Made by a program: the position numbers and the translations under genes
Source: Zootoca vivipara
Taxonomy: Eukaryota
Direction of reading: 5' to 3'
DNA length: 64,000 nucleotides
Assembly: GCF_963506605.1 (NCBI RefSeq)
Contig: NC_083276.1
Location: 65,472,001-65,536,000, forward strand
Part shown: positions 12,358 through 63,673 of the stretch, piece by piece
Layout: each line of letters opens with the position of its first letter
Numbering within the stretch: the stretch's first letter is position 1
The notes under the pieces: generated by a model
The model's database searches: none
What the model saw: only the letters and a program-made list of their open reading frames with translations
Told to the model about the DNA's origin: nothing

Positions 12358-12455
12358 ATAGAATCATAGAATTGTAGTCGGAAGGGACCACAAGGGTCAT
12401 CTAGTCCAACCCCCTGCAATGCAGGATTTTTTTCCTAAGGTGGGGCTTGAACCAT
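12358..12455 (-). mobile_element. tRNA-Lys/CR1-tail SINE, 3' part
   Basis: atagaatcatagaattgtag...ctagtccaaccccctgcaatgcagga...gtggggcttgaacc; same family as 60305-60440. Confidence 0.75.
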
Positions 12456-26444: not shown

Positions 26445-26448
26445 CTAA

Positions 26449-27810
26449 CTCTCCTCCGCTATTTGTAAGGCCTCGTTGGACAGCCATTTTGCTTTCTTGC
26501 ATTTCCTTTTCCTTGGGATGGTTTTCGTTGCTGCCTCCTGTATAATGTTACGAGCCTCCATCCATAGTTCTTCAGGCACTCTGTCCACCAAATCTAAATC
26601 CTTAAACCTGTTCCTCACTTCCACTGTGTATTCATAAGGGATTTGATTCAGATTGTATCTTACTGGCCCAGTGGTTTTTCCTACTTTCTTCAGTTTAAGC
26701 TGGAATTTTGCTATAAGAAGCTGATGATCTGAGTTACAGTCAGCTCCAGGTCTTGTTTTTGCTGATTGTATAGAGCTTCTCCATCTTTGGCTGCAGAGAA
26801 TATAATCAATCTGATTTCGATGCTGCCCATTTGGTGATATCCATGTGTAGAGTCGTCTCTTGTGTTGTTGGAAGAGAGTGTTTGTGATGACCAGCTTGTT
26901 CTCTTGACAGAACTCTATTAGCCTTTGCCCTGCTTCATTTTGAACTCCAAGGCCAAACTTGCCAGTTGTTCCTTTTATCTCTTGATTCCCTACTTTAGCA
27001 TTCCAATCCCCTGTAATGAGAAGAACATCCTTCTTTGGTGTCATTTCTAGAAGGTGTTGTAGGTCTTCATAGAATTGGTCAATTTCACTTTCTTCAGCTC
27101 CGGTAGTTGGTGCATAAACTTGGATTACTGTGATGTTAAAAGGTCTGCCTTGGATTCGTATCGAGATCATTCTGTCATTTTTGAGATTGCATCCCATTAC
27201 AGCTTTTGCCACTCTTTTGTTGACTATGAGGGCCACTCCATTTCTACTACAGGATTCTTGCCCACAGTAGTAGATACGATAGTCACCCGAACTGAATTCG
27301 CCCATTCCCTTCCATTTTAGTTCACTGATGCCCAGGATGTCGATATTTATTCTTGTCATCTCATTTTTGACCACATCCAGCTTACCTCCACTCATGGTTC
27401 TTACATTCCAGGTTCCTATGCAATATTTTTCTTTACAGCATCGGACTTTCCTTTCGCTTCCAGGCATATCCGCAACTGAGCGTCCTTTCGGCTTTGGCCC
27501 AGCCGCTTCATCAGCTCTGAATCTACTTGTACTTGTCCTCCGCTCTTCCTCAGTAGCATGTTGGACGCCTTCCGACCTGAGGGGCTCATCTTCCAGCGTC
27601 ATAACTTTTATATGCCTGTTGTCTTTGTCCATGGAGTTTTCTTGGCAGGGATACGAGTGGCTTGCCAGTTCCTTCTCCAGGTGGATCACGTTTAGTCAAA
27701 ACTCTCCACTATGACCTGTCCATCTTGGGTGGCCCTGCATGGCATAGCTCATAGCTTCTCTGAGTTATTCAAGCCCCTTCGCCACGACAAGGCATTGATC
27801 CATGAAGGGG
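26449..27810 (-). mobile_element. BovB (RTE clade) LINE, 5' 1.36 kb including the APE endonuclease; 3' part absent
   Basis: Uninterrupted 414-codon ORF with CIGTWNVR, ILGISELKW, QVYAPT, GDWNAKVG, NQIDYIL, SDHQLL; BovB-type 5' end CCCCTTCATGGATC..GCCTTGTCGTGGCGAAGGGGCTTG. Confidence 0.95.
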
Positions 27811-32624: not shown

Positions 32625-34614
32625 GGTGGGGGATGCCTGTCCTTTGAATAGCTGTAGGGGAGGTAGCTGACTGGCAGGTGTGGCTTCTTTCATTACAATG
32701 TTAAGAGTACATTTTGCTGCAGCATCTGTAACAAGCATTTCTGTAGGTACCAGATCCCCCTTTCATATACCTGGATTACCAGGATACTGGGCTGGTGCTG
32801 AAACTGAGGAGAATTCAGGCCATTTACTGCTGCCACTCTCAGTGAAAGGGCTTACATGACATTTCCTCGAGCACACAAAGTCTGCAGAGAAATTTCTTAA
32901 ACACACACACAGCCTCCATAAGTCATTGGGGAAACATCTGAATCTTTAAAGGGAGGACAAATGGTTGTTATATATTGATTTCCACCCACTTCAAGCACTT
33001 TCCTAAGCAATGGCAATGTGCCATTATCCCCATTATAGAGCTCAATGTGAAAGTGCAAAGAGGGAAAACGGTTTGCCTAAGGTCACACTTACACAGGTTC
33101 TGAGTGGAGCAGGAACAAGAGACGTATCTCCTGAGTCCCATTCTAGCATCCTACTTAGTGGGAAATCACAGCGCGAGTTTGGCATTTTCTTCTGCCCTGG
33201 GATGGCCCGCTATATGTGATTTCAGGTTTTTGCAGCAAAAATTGGCACGTCACTTTATTTAACTTAATGGGCAAAACAGAAATAGTGAGTATACACTAGC
33301 TCGGGGCAGTGCAAGAATCATCTCAATGTGTGAATGTTGAAGAAAGCCATGCTAAAAGCAACATGGATCAAAATAGAATGTGGTAATGCAACATAATTTA
33401 GCAGGCTTCCATTCTGAGCTGTAAAAACCCTACAGTCATAATAGGGGAGAGCTAGAATGGGCCTTAAAAATGGCAAGGTAGTAATATTTAGATTAAGCAC
33501 TTCAAAATGTTGAAGGTGCTTGACCTACACTTTCTTGCAATCTTTACAACAACCCTGTAAGGTAAATAAATCAATATGGGTGGGATGTTTCTCCTCTTAG
33601 TTTTAATTTATCTATGTGGGGCTTATTGTCTGTTCGGTTGAAAATTGCTTTGGGTTGCCCTGGGCAAGATATAGCTACAGTACTGACAAATTTAAAAAAT
33701 AATAAAAATGACCAGTGTTATTACGGTATTCCCCCTCCAATGTGGAAGGAGGCACTCCTTCCGGTAGTTTGGCTCCAAGTCAACTTCGGGCATTGCAGGT
33801 TAACATGAACACATTTAATTGGGCTCAGACACAATATAGCAGTTTCCTCAGGACTGATGCCATTTGGGCCCATCTCACTGCTCTGGTTTACATCCTGGCT
33901 ACTACTACACCCCACAGAGTGCATTAAGCAAGAGTATCTCAGATGCTATTAGACTCCTATCAGCCCCAGCAGGCAAGCAGTCACCAGCATCCCGAGCATG
34001 TGGGAGAACTTCCTCTACTTCTCACCCACCCCCACTTCTCCCCACCCCCGCTAACCCAGCATGGGGCAAAAGAGGCACCTGCCTGAGTGTGCACCCCTCC
34101 ACCCCTTCCTTCTCTCCCCATGCTCTTTTTAAAAAAAGGCAAGACCCACTGTGAGCCCCACCTGGCTGGCAAGCAGCAATGGCCTGAGCATGCAGGTATA
34201 GTCACACTGCTCGAATCTCTTTTCAGAAGCCCCTGCACAGGTCAAAGGAAGCACCTACCACCAGCTGCATGTGCCTAGCGGGCAACAGTGGTAAAGGTGC
34301 TGGCACAGTACTCTGTAACAGAGCGTTCTAGCAGGGGAAAGAACACACTGCTTGGAACTACATCATAGCAGTGGTGATTGTATCTATGTATGTGCATCTG
34401 TTCACATAGTGCAGGAGTAGCTGGTGTGTTGCCCTCCAGATGTTGATGGACTGCAACTTCCATCAGCCCCAACCAACATGGTCAAGGATGATGGAAGTTG
34501 TAGTTCAATGGGCTCCAGGTCTACAGAGGGCACCACTTTGGCTACCCCCTAAAGTAGTCCATAAGATGAGTAGTCCATGAGTGGAGTAGTTCATAAGTTG
34601 AGTGCTGTTGTAAC

Positions 34615-34810
34615 CAGGGCTGTCTTAAGCATATCGGGCACCCTGGTGCTGTGGTGCGAAGATCGCTCCGGCGCGCCCCCCCACAGTTTCCCGCCGCGGC
34701 TGTCTGGCGGGCACAGCACTACTGCAGCGGGCGCAGCCGTGCGGCGCCCCCCAGGTGGCCCGGCGCCCTGGTGCCCTGCGCCACCCAGCCTTGCCTTAGA
34801 GCCGGCCCTG
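34615..34810. mobile_element. GC-rich non-autonomous hAT (cargo-free relative of 61065-61468)
   Basis: CAGGGCTGTC...GCCGGCCCTG TIRs; perfect TSD GTTGTAAC at 34607-34614 and 34811-34818. Confidence 0.9.
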
Positions 34811-34969
34811 GTTGTAACCCAAATTTCTGACCCAATCTACCCTTGATATAATATTCCCTCTCTCCTCATTTATTTGGCACGGTACTGAGCTTTGGGAAAC
34901 TGCTTTAGTGCAGCCTTCGGGTTCTATTGTCAATCCCCTCCAAACAAAATGGGAAAAGAAGTGGAAAAT

Positions 34970-35489: not shown

Positions 35490-36385
35490 CAGGATTAAAG
35501 CGAGGGCAGGGGAATAAAATTTACTGCCTTCAGTGCATTGAAAGAAAACATTATGAAAGTGATGTATGAATGGTATATAACATCAGCAAAATTAGCTAAA
35601 ATGTATAAAACAGATAATAAATGTTGAAAATGTAAAGAAAAAGAGGGTACCTATTACCATATGTGGTGGGAATGTAAGAAAGTGAAGGGCTTCTGGGAAA
35701 TGATTTATAATGAGATTTTAAAAATGTTGAAATATACATTTGTTACAGAATGTTACAGAAATTCATAAGAATGATAAAAAAATGTTTTTTATATGTGATA
35801 ACTGCAGCAAGGATACTATCAGCCCAAAGATGGAAACAAAAAGAAATACCAACTAAAGAAGAGTGCCAAGAGAAACTGATGAACTGTGTTCAGATGGCGA
35901 GACTAATGGGAAATTCGGAACCAGCAGGACCAGACTTTCCTAAAGGAATAGAAGAAGTTTTCGATATACTGTATCTGGAAAGCAATTGTAATCAACTGAC
36001 ATCATTTACAGCAGTGTTCCTCAACCTTGGGCCTCCAGCTGTTTCGGGACTACAACTCCCATCATCCTGAGCTAGCAGGACCAGTGGCTGGGGATGATGG
36101 GAGTTGTAGTCCCAAAACAGCTGGAGGCCCAAGGTTGAGGAACACTGATTTATAGGGTTAAAAGAAGTTTTGTAAGGAGCAATTTATAAATTATTGTGAA
36201 AAGAATTAAGAATAGATGCATTGGAAATTTGAGTTTATAGCAATAATTATAGTAACAAAATGCATAATTAGAAAGACTTTAGAAAACCATCAGTCTTAGG
36301 CTGTGATAGCCAAAATTTTTGAAAGGATGTTATGCTGAAAAATATGTGTAAAAACTAATAAGAAATAATTTTAAAAATAAAATAA
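35490..36385 (+). mobile_element. L1-type LINE 3' end (ORF2 zinc knuckle + 3' UTR), degenerate
   Basis: C*KCKEKEGTYYHMWWEC CCHC motif, AARILSAQRWK, A-rich tail. Confidence 0.85.
36012..36147. mobile_element. Palindromic hAT MITE nested in L1
   Basis: CAGTGTTCCTCAACCTTGGGCC TIRs; TSD ATTTACAG/ATTTATAG. Confidence 0.92.
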
Positions 36386-37530
36386 AGAATCATAGAATTG
36401 GAAGAGACCACAAGGGCCATCCAGTCCAACCCCCTGCCAAGCAGGAAACACCATCAAAGCATTCTTGACATATGCCTGTCAAGCCTCTGCTTAAAGACCT
36501 CCAAAGAAGGAGACTCCACCACACTCCTTGGCAGCAAATCCCACTGCCGAACAGCTCTTACTGTCAGGAAGTTCTTCCTAATGTTTAGGTGGAATCTTCT
36601 TTCTTGTAGTTTGAATCCATTGCTCCGTGTCCGCTTCTCTGGAGCAACAGAAAACAACTTTTCTCCCTCCTCTATATGACATCCTTTTATATATTTGAAC
36701 ATGGCTATCATATCACCCCTTAACCTTCTCTTCTCCAGGATAAACATACCCCAGCTCCCTAAGCCGTTCCTCATAAGGCATCATTTCCAGGCCTTTGACC
36801 ATTTTGGTTGCCCTCTTCTGGACACATTCCAGCTTGTCAGTATCCTTTTTGAACTGTGGTGCCCAGAACTGGACACAGTACTCCAGGTGAGGTCTGACCA
36901 GAGCAGAATACAGTGGTACTATTACTTCCCTTGATCTAGATGCTATACTCCTATTCATGCAGCCCAGAATTGCATTGGCTTTTTTAGCTGCTGTATTGCA
37001 CTGTTAACTCATGTCAAGTTTGGGGTCTACCAAGACTCCTAGATTCTTTTCACATGTACTGCTCTCAAGCCAGGTGTCTCCCATCCTGTATTTGTGCCTT
37101 TCATTTCTTTTTGCCCAAGTGTAGTACTTTACATTTCTCCTTGTTAAAATTCATCTTGGTTGCTTTGGCCCAGCTGTCTAATCTGTTAAGGTCATTCTGA
37201 AGTGTGATCCTGTCCTCTGGGGTATTAGCCACCCCTCCCAATTTGGTGTCATCTGCAAACTTGCTCAGGATGCCCTCAAGCCCATCATCCAAGTCATAGA
37301 TAAAGATGTTGAATAAGACTGGGCCCAAGACAGAACCCTGTGGCACCCCACTAGTCACTTCTCTCCAGGATGAGGAGGAGCCATTGATGAGCACCCTTTG
37401 GGTTCAGTCAGTCAGCCAGTTACAAATCCACTGAATGGTAGCATTGTCTAGCCTGCATTTTACCAGCTTCTTTACAAGAATATCATGGGGCACCTTGTCA
37501 AAGGCCTTGCTGAAATCATGATAGGCTACA
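36386..37530 (-). mobile_element. CR1 LINE, 5'-truncated (RT + 3' end)
   Basis: [48 protein letters not shown]; (ATTCTATG)n tail. Confidence 0.96.
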
Positions 37531-49992: not shown

Positions 49993-50130
49993 NNNNNNNN
50001 NNNNNNNNNNNNNNNNNNNNNNNNNNNNNNNNNNNNNNNNNNNNNNNNNNNNNNNNNNNNNNNNNNNNNNNNNNNNNNNNNNNNNNNNNNNNNNNNNNNN
50101 NNNNNNNNNNNNNNNNNNNNNNNNNNNNNN
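49993..50130. other. Assembly gap (138 N)
   Basis: N run; preceded by a short CR1 RT fragment (KFADDT) at about 49945-49977. Confidence 1.
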
Positions 50131-59624: not shown

Positions 59625-60183
59625 ACGGTCCCAATTCTAGGCTGCATCAACAGAAGTATGGCATCCAGAACACGGGAAGTAACTGTGTCACCCTATTTTG
59701 TCTTGATCAGACCTCACCTGGAGTACTGTGTCCGGTTCTGGGCACCTCAATTTAATAAGCAGTATAGCGAGTTGGAATGTGTGCAGAGGAGGGATGACAA
59801 AGGATCTGGATACAAAGACTTATAAGGAACAGTTGAGGAAACTGGGTATGTTATACCTTGGAGAAAGAAGGACTGAGGGGTGATATGACAGGGCTGTCAA
59901 ATGGAAGATGAAGTAAGCTTGTTTTCTGCTGCTCCAGAGGGTAGGACCCAAACTAATGGATTCAAGTCACAAGAAAGGGGATTCTGACTCAACACCAGGG
60001 AGAACTTTCTGATGGTAAGAGCTGTTTGAAAGTGGAACAAACTACTTCATAGGGTAATGGAGTCTCCTTCATTGGAGATTTTTAAATAGAGCCCTACGTT
60101 GGGGAAAAGATTCCTACATTGAAAGGGCTTGGACTAGATAATCCTTGGGGTCCCTTCAAACTCTACAATGCTATGATTCTATG
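59625..60183 (+). mobile_element. CR1 3' fragment fused to a SINE-type 3' half
   Basis: [23 protein letters not shown]1 motifs to about 60085, then gagccctacgttgggg..attcctacattg and a tatgattctatg tail. Confidence 0.8.
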
Positions 60184-60931: not shown

Positions 60932-61057
60932 GACAGGTAGCTCAGCCAGTAGAGCATGAGACTCTTAATCTCAGGGCCGTGGGTTTGATTCCTGCATTGT
61001 AGGGGGCTGGACTACATGACCGCGATGGCCCCTTCCAACTCTACAATTCTATGATTC
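60932..61057 (+). mobile_element. tRNA-Lys(CTT)-derived SINE with CR1 tail
   Basis: TAGCTCAGCCAGTAGAGCATGAGACTCTTAATCTCAGGG head; ttccaactctacaattctatgattc tail. Confidence 0.85.
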
Positions 61058-61064
61058 TTCAGCG

Positions 61065-61468
61065 CAGGCCCGTCCCTACGCCGCCGCCCCCCAACTCACC
61101 GCGGACGCAGAGGAGGGACATGGCATGGGCAGGCCGGGCGCTGAGGGTGGGCCGGGCTCAGGGGCGCCGCAGCAGGTGGGCCGGGCACCTGGTTGTCCTC
61201 CGGGGCACCAGCAGCGCCACCTCCTCCTGCACGGAGGCCTCTGCTGCGGGGGCAGTGCCGCGCAGTGCCCGGCCTCTCGTCCTCCTCATGCCCCTGGCAA
61301 CCCACCAGGCTGAGGCCAGGACTCGAACCTGCGGTGGGAGGGAGGGAGGCAAGAAGCAGGGCGAGCAGGAGGGCGGCCGGGCTGTCTGGCGGGCGCAGTG
61401 TGGCAGCTCCTGGCGGCCCAGCGCCCTGGCGCATTGCGCCACCCAGCCTTGCCTTAGGGCCGGCCCTG
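61065..61468. mobile_element. GC-rich non-autonomous hAT carrying captured host sequence (Pack-TIR-like)
   Basis: CAGGCCCGTCCCTA...TAGGGCCGGCCCTG TIRs; TSD CTTCAGCG (61057-61064) / CTTCAGTG (61469-61476); right 90 bp shared with 34615-34810. Confidence 0.85.
61094..61124 (-). pseudogene. UNC13B: Captured copy of a UNC13B (Munc13-2)-type first coding exon end
   Basis: gcc ATG TCC CTC CTC TGC GTC CGC G|GTGAGT = MSLLCVR + phase-1 donor after 22 coding nt, matching the recalled N-terminus and exon-1 boundary of UNC13B. Confidence 0.75.
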
Positions 61469-63673
61469 CTTCAGTGATTATTCCATTGCAGAAGGACTCT
61501 AGGCCAGATCTCTTCAGGTGTTGTGCCTTGTTATAATTGTGTGATTACAGTTGCATGAGGAGGAAAGGAGGGCTTCAGTCACTGGCCTAACCCAAAGCCC
61601 TCTGCCAGGCCTCCTCTCCTCCATCCACATGTTAAGGTGGAAAGTCCCAGAAAGGAAGTAATGCTGCACATGTCGAGGGATCTCCATATGGTTTAGAACC
61701 CTCTAAATGGCACAGGAAGCCTATGCACATAAAGCATGCTACTCTCTTCATACTGCGCCCCCCCCCAAAAAAACCATGCCTGACAGCAGGGTGTGACAAC
61801 AGGGAAGAGGCCAGCGCATGTTCTGTTCCACATGTGATTGTAAGCATCAAGGCATAATGCCTGAACAAGGCCAAATCTGTCATCTGACAATTACATGTCA
61901 CAACAATTACATTGTTTCGGGCTGTTTTATGGGAAGCAAATCATAAATGAAGTAAATAAATAAAGTGGCAATGGTGTTTGGGTGATTTTGTAGAAAATAA
62001 ATCTTTCAACCAATTATTTATAAAATATAAAAAGAAATATAGTAATTACCAGGATGTGATGAAAGCAAAACAAGAGTCACTCTTTTTAAACCAGTGCTTC
62101 TATTTTAAACTATCCCACCTCCACCACCCCTTTCTGCTCTATAATGTTTTGGAGTGAAAACATTCTTTTGAGAAATGCTTCTAAACAGCTTTTCTGGTTA
62201 ACACTATCCCTGGTCTTTTAAAAATAAACACTTTCACAAAACATTTTCAGCACAACCAGCCCATTCTGTGACAAATATGACATTAACTGCTGAGGCCTAC
62301 TGTGTGTTTATTTACTGCAAGTTTCCTTACTTGATAAGATAGTTCTTCTAAATAGATGTACTGTGCAGATTGAAAATGCCTTTCAGTTTAAAACAACCTG
62401 GCAATGATTTATCGTTCTGTAAAAAGCAGAGGTTATTTAGAAACAATCACTCTCTAACAGACCTGGGGCACTTCCACCTGACCTGTTTATTGATCCTGCA
62501 TCCTGATTTGCTTGCAGGGAGATTAGAAAACACTGGCTATTTAATGAGCCTTCATTCTGATTTCTTTTAAGGAAAGGTTGGATGATGATTTGTAAATGCA
62601 AGTTTAAATGCCCACACTTTCCAGTACATTTTCACATCACTTTCCTTCTTGCAAAAAGTCTGATTTTTGGAGAACTCTCTGGTTCTACACTGAATGACTA
62701 TTGGTTTGTTTCATAGATATGCATTTCAAGGCCACAAGTCTCTTTTTTGTAAAAAGAGTGATTGCTGCATGATGCTATAATTTTATTTCAAGGTATTGGA
62801 GCTGGTGTCAGAGGTTGGCAGAGTTGGGTTCCTGCCAAGGCCCACACCTCATAAAGTATAATTGTTTAATTGCACACTGAAATTGAGAATGCCTGTATGC
62901 AGGTTGTAAAAGGTTTAACATTGGAAAATTCCATTCGAGTATACTAAGCTAGAAAGAGCACTCTCTAAGCTTCTGAGTTGATAATTAACTGTTGGTGTTC
63001 TCTGCTAGCCTTCACTTGAGTGTTTAACCTTAGATCATGTGATTAAGGTATTCAATTGCAAATCTCCATCTTGAAGGGAGTGGCAAGTTAGTCTTTCCCT
63101 GGACACCACTGAGAACAAAAGGATGTGATCACGGCTCTCCAGGAGCTGCATAGCCTTAGGCTGGATGCAAGTTAATGCAAGCTATGGGAGAGACAAAGAT
63201 TTGATTTTTACGTTGATCATAATTATGTTATATATATGAAGATATATGCTTGAATATGCATGTGCTTTACACAACTTTCTGGGTGTATCATTGATTGTTT
63301 TGTACCTGTTTTTGAAGAAGTTCTGGTTAGTAAAGCTCTGAGTAATACTTATGCGTCCAAGAGGAGTCAGTTTTTATGCACCCAGTTGCTTCATACTGCC
63401 CAATATTAATATGTGCAATGCACCTCAGAAGAGGGTCCACAGCACATCTGACGACCAGAGCCCCTAACCTTGCTGGTGCTTCTCTTGCAACTTCTGCCTT
63501 TATACCTGTGATCTCCCTCTAGCCTAGAGAGTGAGAGTGAGTAACTGGGCGAATGAGTAAGTGGTGCAAGGAGAAGGAACAGCTGCTTCTGCTCACTTTC
63601 ACACTTGCCCTTTTATCCCCAATGGGAGCATCTTGCTCTAGGTCAGTTTCAAACGCTGGCTATGAGCTGTATG

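What the first reader, a model, noticed from the sequence alone, without database searches (positions are those of the whole stretch)
61065..61468. hAT transposon carrying the first coding exon of UNC13B (Pack-TIR-like gene capture)
Seen: TIRs plus an 8-bp TSD enclose about 290 bp of CpG-rich sequence that is absent from the sibling element at 34615-34810. On the - strand this cargo ends in Kozak gccATG, MSLLCVR and G|GTGAGT. Established: UNC13B begins MSLLCVRV and its exon 1 ends after 22 coding nt; Pack-MULEs and Pack-TIRs capture host fragments, with GC-rich 5' gene ends favoured in Pack-MULEs. Inference: this is a DNA-level capture (the intron donor is retained, so it is not a retrocopy) of the UNC13B 5' UTR/exon 1. 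The out-of-frame upstream ATG at 61124-61126 may be CpG decay, consistent with a non-native copy.
Basis: partly seen in the sequence, partly recalled or inferred. Interest (0 to 1): 0.88.

Follow-up and report, generated by a model that had tools for sequence, protein, structure and literature searches.

The report
hAT MITE carrying UNC13B-like first exon
A 404-base non-autonomous hAT transposon in a lizard genome holds about 300 bases of foreign CpG-rich DNA that ends in what looks like the start codon, first seven codons and splice donor of UNC13B; this kind of gene-fragment capture is already known in animals, and I could not confirm the UNC13B source here.

Summary
Window 61065-61468 is a genuine hAT-type non-autonomous element. 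It has an 8-bp target-site duplication (CTTCAGCG / CTTCAGTG) and terminal inverted repeats matching at 12 of 14 positions. This combination appeared in 0 of 100,000 composition-matched simulations.

Its right 91 bp match the 196-bp sibling at 34615-34810, which has a perfect TSD (GTTGTAAC). Its TIR matches the published Anolis hAT-N6/N7/N8 TIR at 11 of 12 positions. The left arm is reduced to 14 nt.

Between the arms lie 299 bp (75% GC) that occur nowhere else in the window. On the minus strand this cargo ends in ATG-MSLLCVR-G|GTGAGT, followed by only 21 nt of intron-like sequence.

The most likely reading (about 0.6) is a Pack-hAT, with filler DNA copied from an UNC13B-like 5' end by double-strand-break repair.

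The UNC13B origin rests only on seven codons, the donor position and recalled knowledge. No parental copy, copy number, orthologous empty site or transcript could be checked.

The exon lies inside the TIR/TSD boundaries, so a plain native-locus reading is unlikely. Tan et al. 2021 already reported 208 animal Pack-hATs, including one that captured a 291-bp 5'UTR. This would therefore be a new member of a known kind, of modest interest.

The parts
61057..61064 (.). Left copy of the 8-bp target-site duplication, CTTCAGCG. It overlaps the last bases of a SINE 3' tail.
   Evidence: 7 of 8 identical to 61469-61476. The SINE homology to copies at 60109-60180 and 12360-12426 ends at about 61058.
61065..61078 (+). 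Left terminal inverted repeat, CAGGCCCGTCCCTA. This is all that remains of the left arm.
   Evidence: 12 of 14 match to the reverse complement of the right TIR. It shares the left-end-specific 'GTC' with the sibling's left TIR, CAGGGCTGTC.
61079..61377 (-). Cargo of 299 bp, 75% GC, CpG o/e 0.58. It is absent from the sibling element and unique in the window.
   Evidence: no other blastn hit in the window; alignment with the sibling; composition.
61079..61099 (-). Intron-like remnant of 21 nt that begins with the consensus splice donor GTGAGT (61099-61094).
   Evidence: read directly from the sequence.
61100..61121 (-). Exon-1-like coding piece, ATG TCC CTC CTC TGC GTC CGC G, encoding MSLLCVR plus the first base of a split codon (phase 1).
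   Evidence: this is the only MSLLC in six frames of the window. One search gives the chance expectation. The match to the UNC13B N-terminus comes from recalled knowledge and was not checked with a tool.
61124..61126 (-). Out-of-frame upstream ATG, 5 nt before the main ATG, in a weak context (C at -3).
61378..61468 (+). Right arm of the MITE, including the right TIR (61455-61468). It is homologous to the sibling.
   Evidence: 82% identity over 84 bp to 34727-34810, and the terminal 33 nt differ at 1 position.
61469..61476 (.). Right copy of the target-site duplication, CTTCAGTG.
34615..34810 (+). Sibling hAT MITE of 196 bp without the cargo, flanked by a perfect 8-bp TSD, GTTGTAAC (34607-34614 and 34811-34818).
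   Evidence: Its TSD fits the NTTRYAAN pattern published for Anolis hAT-N6_AC.

Best explanation
This is a Pack-hAT: a non-autonomous hAT element of the CAGRGSCGGYCC-TIR group, related by its TIR to Anolis hAT-N6/N7/N8_AC.

Shown: the element inserted at the 3' end of a SINE and made the 8-bp duplication CTTCAGYG.

Inferred: its interior and nearly all of its left arm were replaced by about 299 bp of filler DNA. This would happen during repair of a double-strand break by template switching (gap filling / synthesis-dependent strand annealing), either in place after insertion or just before transposition. The template was genomic DNA from the CpG-rich 5' end of an UNC13B-like gene. The copy comprises about 256 nt upstream of the ATG, the 22 coding nt of exon 1 and the first 21 nt of intron 1.

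The copy encodes only 7 codons. It is most likely an inert gene fragment, although it retains a start codon and a consensus splice donor pointing along the minus strand.
For: - TIR plus TSD are real: 0 of 100,000 simulations reproduced them. The same partner-end search recovers only this element and the sibling.
- Family membership: the right arm is 82% identical to the sibling. The TIR matches the published Anolis TIR CAGAGSCGGYCC at 11 of 12 positions. 8-bp TSDs and YARNG ends are the hAT hallmarks in lizards (PMC3014272).
- The interior is unrelated to the sibling and unique in the window.
- The GC-rich block ends exactly at the TIRs, while the flanks are CpG-depleted.
- ATG-MSLLCVR-G|GTGAGT is present and very unlikely by chance for this peptide. 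The similarity to the recalled UNC13B N-terminus stops exactly where a consensus donor begins. The split codon G|.. is compatible with the recalled next residue, Val.
- Precedent: Tan et al. 2021 found 370 animal Pack-TIRs, 208 of them hAT. These include a frog hAT-N8_XT carrying 291 bp of the CAPSL 5'UTR. Most single-copy cases arose by in-place gap filling (PMC8277862).
- Anolis non-autonomous hATs frequently incorporate extraneous DNA.
- A left arm of only 14 nt fits in-place replacement better than a transposing unit.
Against: - No parental copy was seen, and the 256 nt upstream of the ATG were not compared with any true UNC13B 5'UTR.
- That UNC13B begins MSLLCVRV, and that its exon 1 ends after 22 coding nt, comes from recalled knowledge only. 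A full-text search for the peptide found nothing, and a PDB search with the 20-aa read-through found nothing.
- Residue 7 is the only thing separating UNC13B from UNC13A.
- The copy number of the 404-bp form in the genome is unknown, so it could be a regular multi-copy subfamily.
- The coding piece and donor are fully intact although the MITE arm is 18% diverged from the sibling. That is slightly unexpected for an old neutral fragment.
Confidence: 0.6

Rival explanations
1. The interior has another origin. It may be the ordinary interior of a longer (about 400 bp) CpG-rich hAT-N subfamily, or filler from some other GC-rich locus. On this reading the ATG-MSLLCVR-GTGAGT string is a coincidence, recognised after the fact.
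For: - Non-autonomous hAT families that share only TIRs are common in lizards, and the hAT-N6/7/8_AC families are 288-810 bp long.
- The sibling's own interior is equally CpG-rich (o/e 0.73).
- First-stage notes on the same genome mention several hAT MITEs of about 330-440 bp described as CpG-island-like (unchecked).
- The match is only 7 residues. Across all vertebrate N-termini and the 2,459 ATGs in the window, some 7-residue match is not rare.
- No tool confirmed the UNC13B sequence.
Against: - The specific peptide is expected 1.4e-7 times in the cargo and 3e-4 times in the window.
- The match ends exactly at a consensus GTGAGT donor, with a phase compatible with the recalled next residue.
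- There are only 6 ATGs in the cargo.
- The homology to the sibling is asymmetric (14 nt on the left, 91 nt on the right). This looks like a replaced interior rather than a distinct subfamily.
Confidence: 0.22
2. This is the working first exon of UNC13B in this lizard. The window would be the UNC13B locus, the 61 kb below the exon would be intron 1, and the exon and its promoter either are carried by the transposon or only appear to be flanked by it.
For: - The start codon, 7 codons and consensus donor are intact. The block is CpG-island-like (404 bp, 75% GC, o/e 0.59).
- No other host exon is seen in the 61 kb downstream on the minus strand. Only LINE and SINE fragments are present. This is compatible with a very long first intron.
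- Tan et al. report that single-copy Pack-TIRs usually lie near their parent on the same chromosome. The window could therefore be in or near UNC13B, and the copy could serve as an alternative first exon.
Against: - The exon lies inside the body of an element whose TIRs and TSD cannot be chance.
- The CpG-rich block is cut off exactly at the TIRs.
- A SINE begins 35 nt after the donor, and MITE-arm sequence begins 256 nt before the ATG. That leaves very little room for a native promoter.
- No exon-2-like motif (FNTY, YVTLK, WEQDF, AKF and others) occurs anywhere in the window.
- There is an out-of-frame upstream ATG 5 nt before the start.
Confidence: 0.08

Closest known systems
Animal Pack-TIRs, specifically Pack-hAT (Tan et al. 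2021, Nat Commun 12:4280, PMC8277862), for example frog Pack-hAT-N8_XT carrying 291 bp of the CAPSL 5'UTR
   Same: TE sequence lies on both sides of a short non-TE insert of about 300 bp taken from a gene's 5' end. The superfamily is hAT, the TSD is 8 bp, and the proposed origin by gap filling or template switching is the same.
   Different: The parental copy, which their strict definition requires, has not been seen here. The left TE side is only 14 nt. The cargo would include a start codon and splice donor, not only UTR. Copy number is unknown.
Anolis carolinensis hAT-N6_AC / hAT-N7_AC / hAT-N8_AC non-autonomous families (Novick et al. 2011, PMC3014272)
   Same: The TIR CAGGGCCGGCCC matches the published CAGAGSCGGYCC at 11 of 12 positions. 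TSDs are 8 bp, and the sibling's GTTGTAAC fits NTTRYAAN. These are short orphan non-autonomous elements of 288-810 bp. The paper notes frequent incorporation of extraneous DNA.
   Different: Position 4 is G rather than A. The host species here is unnamed.
Plant Pack-MULEs
   Same: A non-autonomous TIR element carries a GC-rich 5' gene fragment that includes a first exon.
   Different: The superfamily is different (Mutator, 9-10-bp TSD). Pack-MULEs are often multi-copy and have long TIRs.

Membership tests
hAT superfamily, non-autonomous element (MITE) | 8-bp target-site duplication | tested here: met
   CTTCAGCG / CTTCAGTG match at 7 of 8 positions, with a CpG transition as the difference. The sibling's GTTGTAAC matches 8 of 8.
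hAT superfamily, non-autonomous element (MITE) | Short TIRs with the terminal YARNG motif | tested here: met
   The right end, CAGGG, fits. The left end, CAGGC, fits at 4 of 5 positions. The TIRs match at 12 of 14, and chance gave 0 of 100,000. The YARNG criterion is from PMC3014272.
hAT superfamily, non-autonomous element (MITE) | Homology to other copies of a TE family | tested here: met
   The right 84 bp are 82% identical to the sibling at 34727-34810. The TIR matches Anolis hAT-N6/7/8_AC at 11 of 12 positions. Only one sibling was available.
Pack-TIR (Tan et al. 2021) | TE sequence on both sides of the internal sequence | tested here: met
   14 nt on the left and 91 nt on the right. The left side is minimal.
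Pack-TIR (Tan et al. 2021) | The internal sequence is non-TE | tested here: inconclusive
   It is unique in the 64-kb window and unrelated to the sibling's interior. No genome-wide repeat check was possible.
Pack-TIR (Tan et al. 2021) | A parental copy exists elsewhere in the same genome | not testable with these tools
Protein-database and metagenome scans were blank.
UNC13B exon 1 (as source of the cargo or as the native exon) | Encodes MSLLCVR and ends after 22 coding nt in a phase-1 donor | tested here: inconclusive
   The sequence has exactly this. The reference N-terminus and exon boundary are recalled, not obtained from a tool (searches were blank).
UNC13B exon 1 (as source of the cargo or as the native exon) | Extended similarity of the upstream 5'UTR and intron flank to the annotated gene | not testable with these tools
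   No reference sequence was available.
UNC13B native locus | Exon 1 is followed by C2A-coding exon 2 and spliced to it | tested here: inconclusive
   No exon-2-like motif occurs in the 61 kb downstream, but intron 1 may be longer than that. No RNA reads could be laid.
UNC13B native locus | Exon and promoter are not part of a transposed unit | tested here: not met
   The exon lies inside the TIR/TSD-bounded element.

The most novel reading that the evidence does not exclude
The element lies in or near UNC13B itself, since in-place gap filling usually copies a nearby parent. Alternatively it lies upstream of another gene. In either case its CpG-rich promoter-like cargo, start codon and splice donor would work as a transposon-borne alternative first exon, producing UNC13B or chimeric transcripts.
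Probability: 0.1. Interest if true: 0.55.

Novelty: new member of a known kind. Interest (0 to 1): 0.3.

Why it matters
If confirmed, this would be a clear squamate example of a DNA transposon duplicating a gene's promoter-proximal region together with its start codon and splice donor. Such a module could seed alternative first exons or chimeric transcripts.

The phenomenon is already documented across 100 animal genomes. The value here is therefore as an annotated case and as a caution for gene prediction, because a decoy UNC13B first exon could mislead annotators. It does not establish a new principle.

Tried and rejected
No reads evidence exists.
- Protein searches: the search for homologous proteins with the 112-aa minus-strand ORF and the 161-aa plus-strand ORF across the element gave nothing.
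- Metagenome scans: two scans for the MITE end gave nothing.
- PDB: a search with the 20-aa read-through gave nothing.
- Literature: a full-text search for MSLLCV gave nothing.
- Earlier findings: look-ups by place, by words (UNC13 and neighbouring gene names) and by sequence were blank or unrelated.
- Exon-2 motif scan: six-frame scanning of the whole window found none.
- RNA scans: ARAGORN and Rfam on 61000-61600 gave no tRNA and only sub-threshold noise. The B-box-like GGTTCGAGTCC in the cargo is therefore unexplained.
- Step left out: I did not type a Munc13 sequence from memory as a query, because it has no reference.
- Rejected reading, retrocopy: a donor and intron-like bases are retained.
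- Rejected reading, chance TIR/TSD: 0 of 100,000 simulations.

Full report
**What is there**

- An 8-bp direct repeat brackets a 404-bp block: CTTCAGCG at 61057-61064 and CTTCAGTG at 61469-61476.
- The ends of the block are inverted repeats. The left end is CAGGCCCGTCCCTA. The reverse complement of the right end is CAGGGCCGGCCCTA. They match at 12 of 14 positions.
- The single TSD difference is a C/T at a CpG.
- In 100,000 first-order Markov simulations of the local 406 bp, a TSD of at least 7/8 directly followed by a TIR of at least 12/14 never occurred.
- I applied the same partner-end search to seven TIR-like sites in the window. Partners turned up only for this element and for the element at 34615-34810.

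**Family**

- The element at 34615-34810 is 196 bp long and has a perfect 8-bp TSD, GTTGTAAC.
- Its terminal 33 nt differ from those of the 61468 end at one position. The right arms are 82% identical over 84 bp.
- The alignment places the start of shared backbone at about 61378. On the left, only the 14-nt TIR is shared.
- The left TIRs of both elements carry GTC where the right TIRs carry GGC. This speaks for a true left end.
- Novick et al. (PMC3014272) list 8-bp TSDs and YARNG termini as the hallmarks of Anolis hATs. They give the TIR CAGAGSCGGYCC for the orphan non-autonomous families hAT-N6/N7/N8_AC (288-810 bp, more than 1,000 copies). The TIR here matches it at 11 of 12 positions.
- The sibling's TSD fits their NTTRYAAN pattern.
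- Their abstract also stresses 'incorporation of extraneous DNA sequences' in non-autonomous lizard transposons.

**The cargo**

- Positions 61079-61377 (299 bp, 75% GC, CpG o/e 0.58) have no other blastn match in the window and are absent from the sibling.
- The GC/CpG-rich block stops exactly at the TIRs. The 2.5 kb to the right have CpG o/e 0.18, and the 2.9 kb to the left have 0.25.
- The left flank is the 3' tail of a tRNA-derived SINE. Its homology to other copies ends at about 61058, so the hAT landed at the SINE's 3' edge.
- On the minus strand the cargo reads: about 256 nt, then an upstream ATG (61126-61124), then ATG TCC CTC CTC TGC GTC CGC G (61121-61100), then GTGAGT (61099-61094), then 15 more nt, then the TIR.
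- This is the only MSLLC in any frame of the window.
- With the cargo's own base composition, MSLLCVR is expected 1.4e-7 times in the cargo and 3e-4 times in the whole window. Adding G|GT lowers both by about 50-fold.

**Is it UNC13B?**

No tool could confirm it.

- The full-text library holds no paper with the peptide.
- The PDB search with the 20-aa read-through was blank.

The sequence itself shows two things. The resemblance stops precisely where a consensus donor starts, and the split codon (G|..) is compatible with Val as the next residue.

There is a look-elsewhere caveat. Across all vertebrate N-termini and the 2,459 ATGs in the window, some 7-residue match is not rare. However, the cargo holds only 6 ATGs, and the donor coincides with the end of the match. 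I therefore judge chance unlikely but not excluded, at about 0.2. That figure also covers the possibility that the 404-bp form is an ordinary multi-copy CpG-rich subfamily. First-stage notes on this genome (unchecked) mention several hAT MITEs of similar size described as CpG-island-like.

**Native locus?**

The exon lies inside the body of the element. The left end, CAGG..., opens rightwards over it, so a plain native exon 1 would require the TIR and TSD to be chance, which one search rules out.

The window has no exon-2-like motif and no host-exon-like ORF. Its longer open frames are LINE endonuclease and RT fragments or GC-rich noise. This neither supports nor excludes a long UNC13B intron 1.

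A transposon-borne copy that serves as a first exon remains possible, at about 0.08-0.1. Tan et al. find that single-copy Pack-TIRs usually arise close to their parent.

**Mechanism**

Tan et al. 2021 (PMC8277862) found 370 Pack-TIRs in 100 animal genomes, 208 of them hAT. One case is a 291-bp CAPSL 5'UTR captured by frog hAT-N8_XT. They showed that single-copy cases mostly arise without transposition: a resident TE suffers a break, and the gap is filled by template switching to another locus.

The element here has a left arm reduced to 14 nt, a retained 91-nt right arm, and one TSD. That fits this model. The MITE inserted first, which is shown by the TSD. Its interior was later replaced, which is inferred. 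Capture before transposition cannot be excluded.

There is no evidence that the fragment is expressed. It encodes 7 codons, and an out-of-frame ATG precedes the start.

**What could not be done**

- Protein-database searches with ORFs across the element and metagenome scans for the MITE end were blank.
- The look-up of sequencing runs shows that the locus is held by runs of one species from several studies. Relatives B-F hold 12-17% of its sampled words. Three RNA runs exist that could settle expression.

**Verdict**

The interpretation as a Pack-hAT is well supported structurally. The UNC13B source is plausible but unverified. The finding is a new member of a known kind, with interest 0.3.

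Noticed in passing
window 61319-61329 (minus strand): The cargo contains GGTTCGAGTCC, a match to the tRNA/SINE B-box consensus, next to an imperfect T-arm-like stem. ARAGORN and Rfam find no tRNA there. Part of the cargo might derive from a tRNA-related repeat rather than from a 5'UTR.
   Followed up: partly
window 61130-61186: An imperfect 28/29-bp direct repeat lies inside the cargo, ending in GGTGGGCCGGGC both times. A third, partial copy is at 61365-61382, next to the cargo/right-arm junction.
   Followed up: no
window about 60935-61058 (+), 60109-60180 (+), 12360-12426 (-), 36385-36450 (-): These are copies of a tRNA-derived SINE with the tail ...CCTTCCAACTCTACAATTCTATGATTCT.
   Followed up: partly
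window 26448-27695 (-): A 416-aa open frame contains a LINE-type endonuclease domain (Exo_endo_phos, E = 7e-14).
   Followed up: partly
window 37104-37403 (-), with neighbouring frames 36457-37003 (-): A reverse-transcriptase fragment (RVT_1, E = 4e-15) belongs to a decayed LINE that is split over several frames.
   Followed up: partly
window 61469-61500: The right flank (GATTATTCCATTGCAGAAGGACTCT) loosely resembles the core of the same SINE family in the alignment. The MITE may sit between two SINE fragments.
   Followed up: no
window 49993-50130: A run of 138 N, either an assembly gap or masked sequence. I left it untouched.
   Followed up: no
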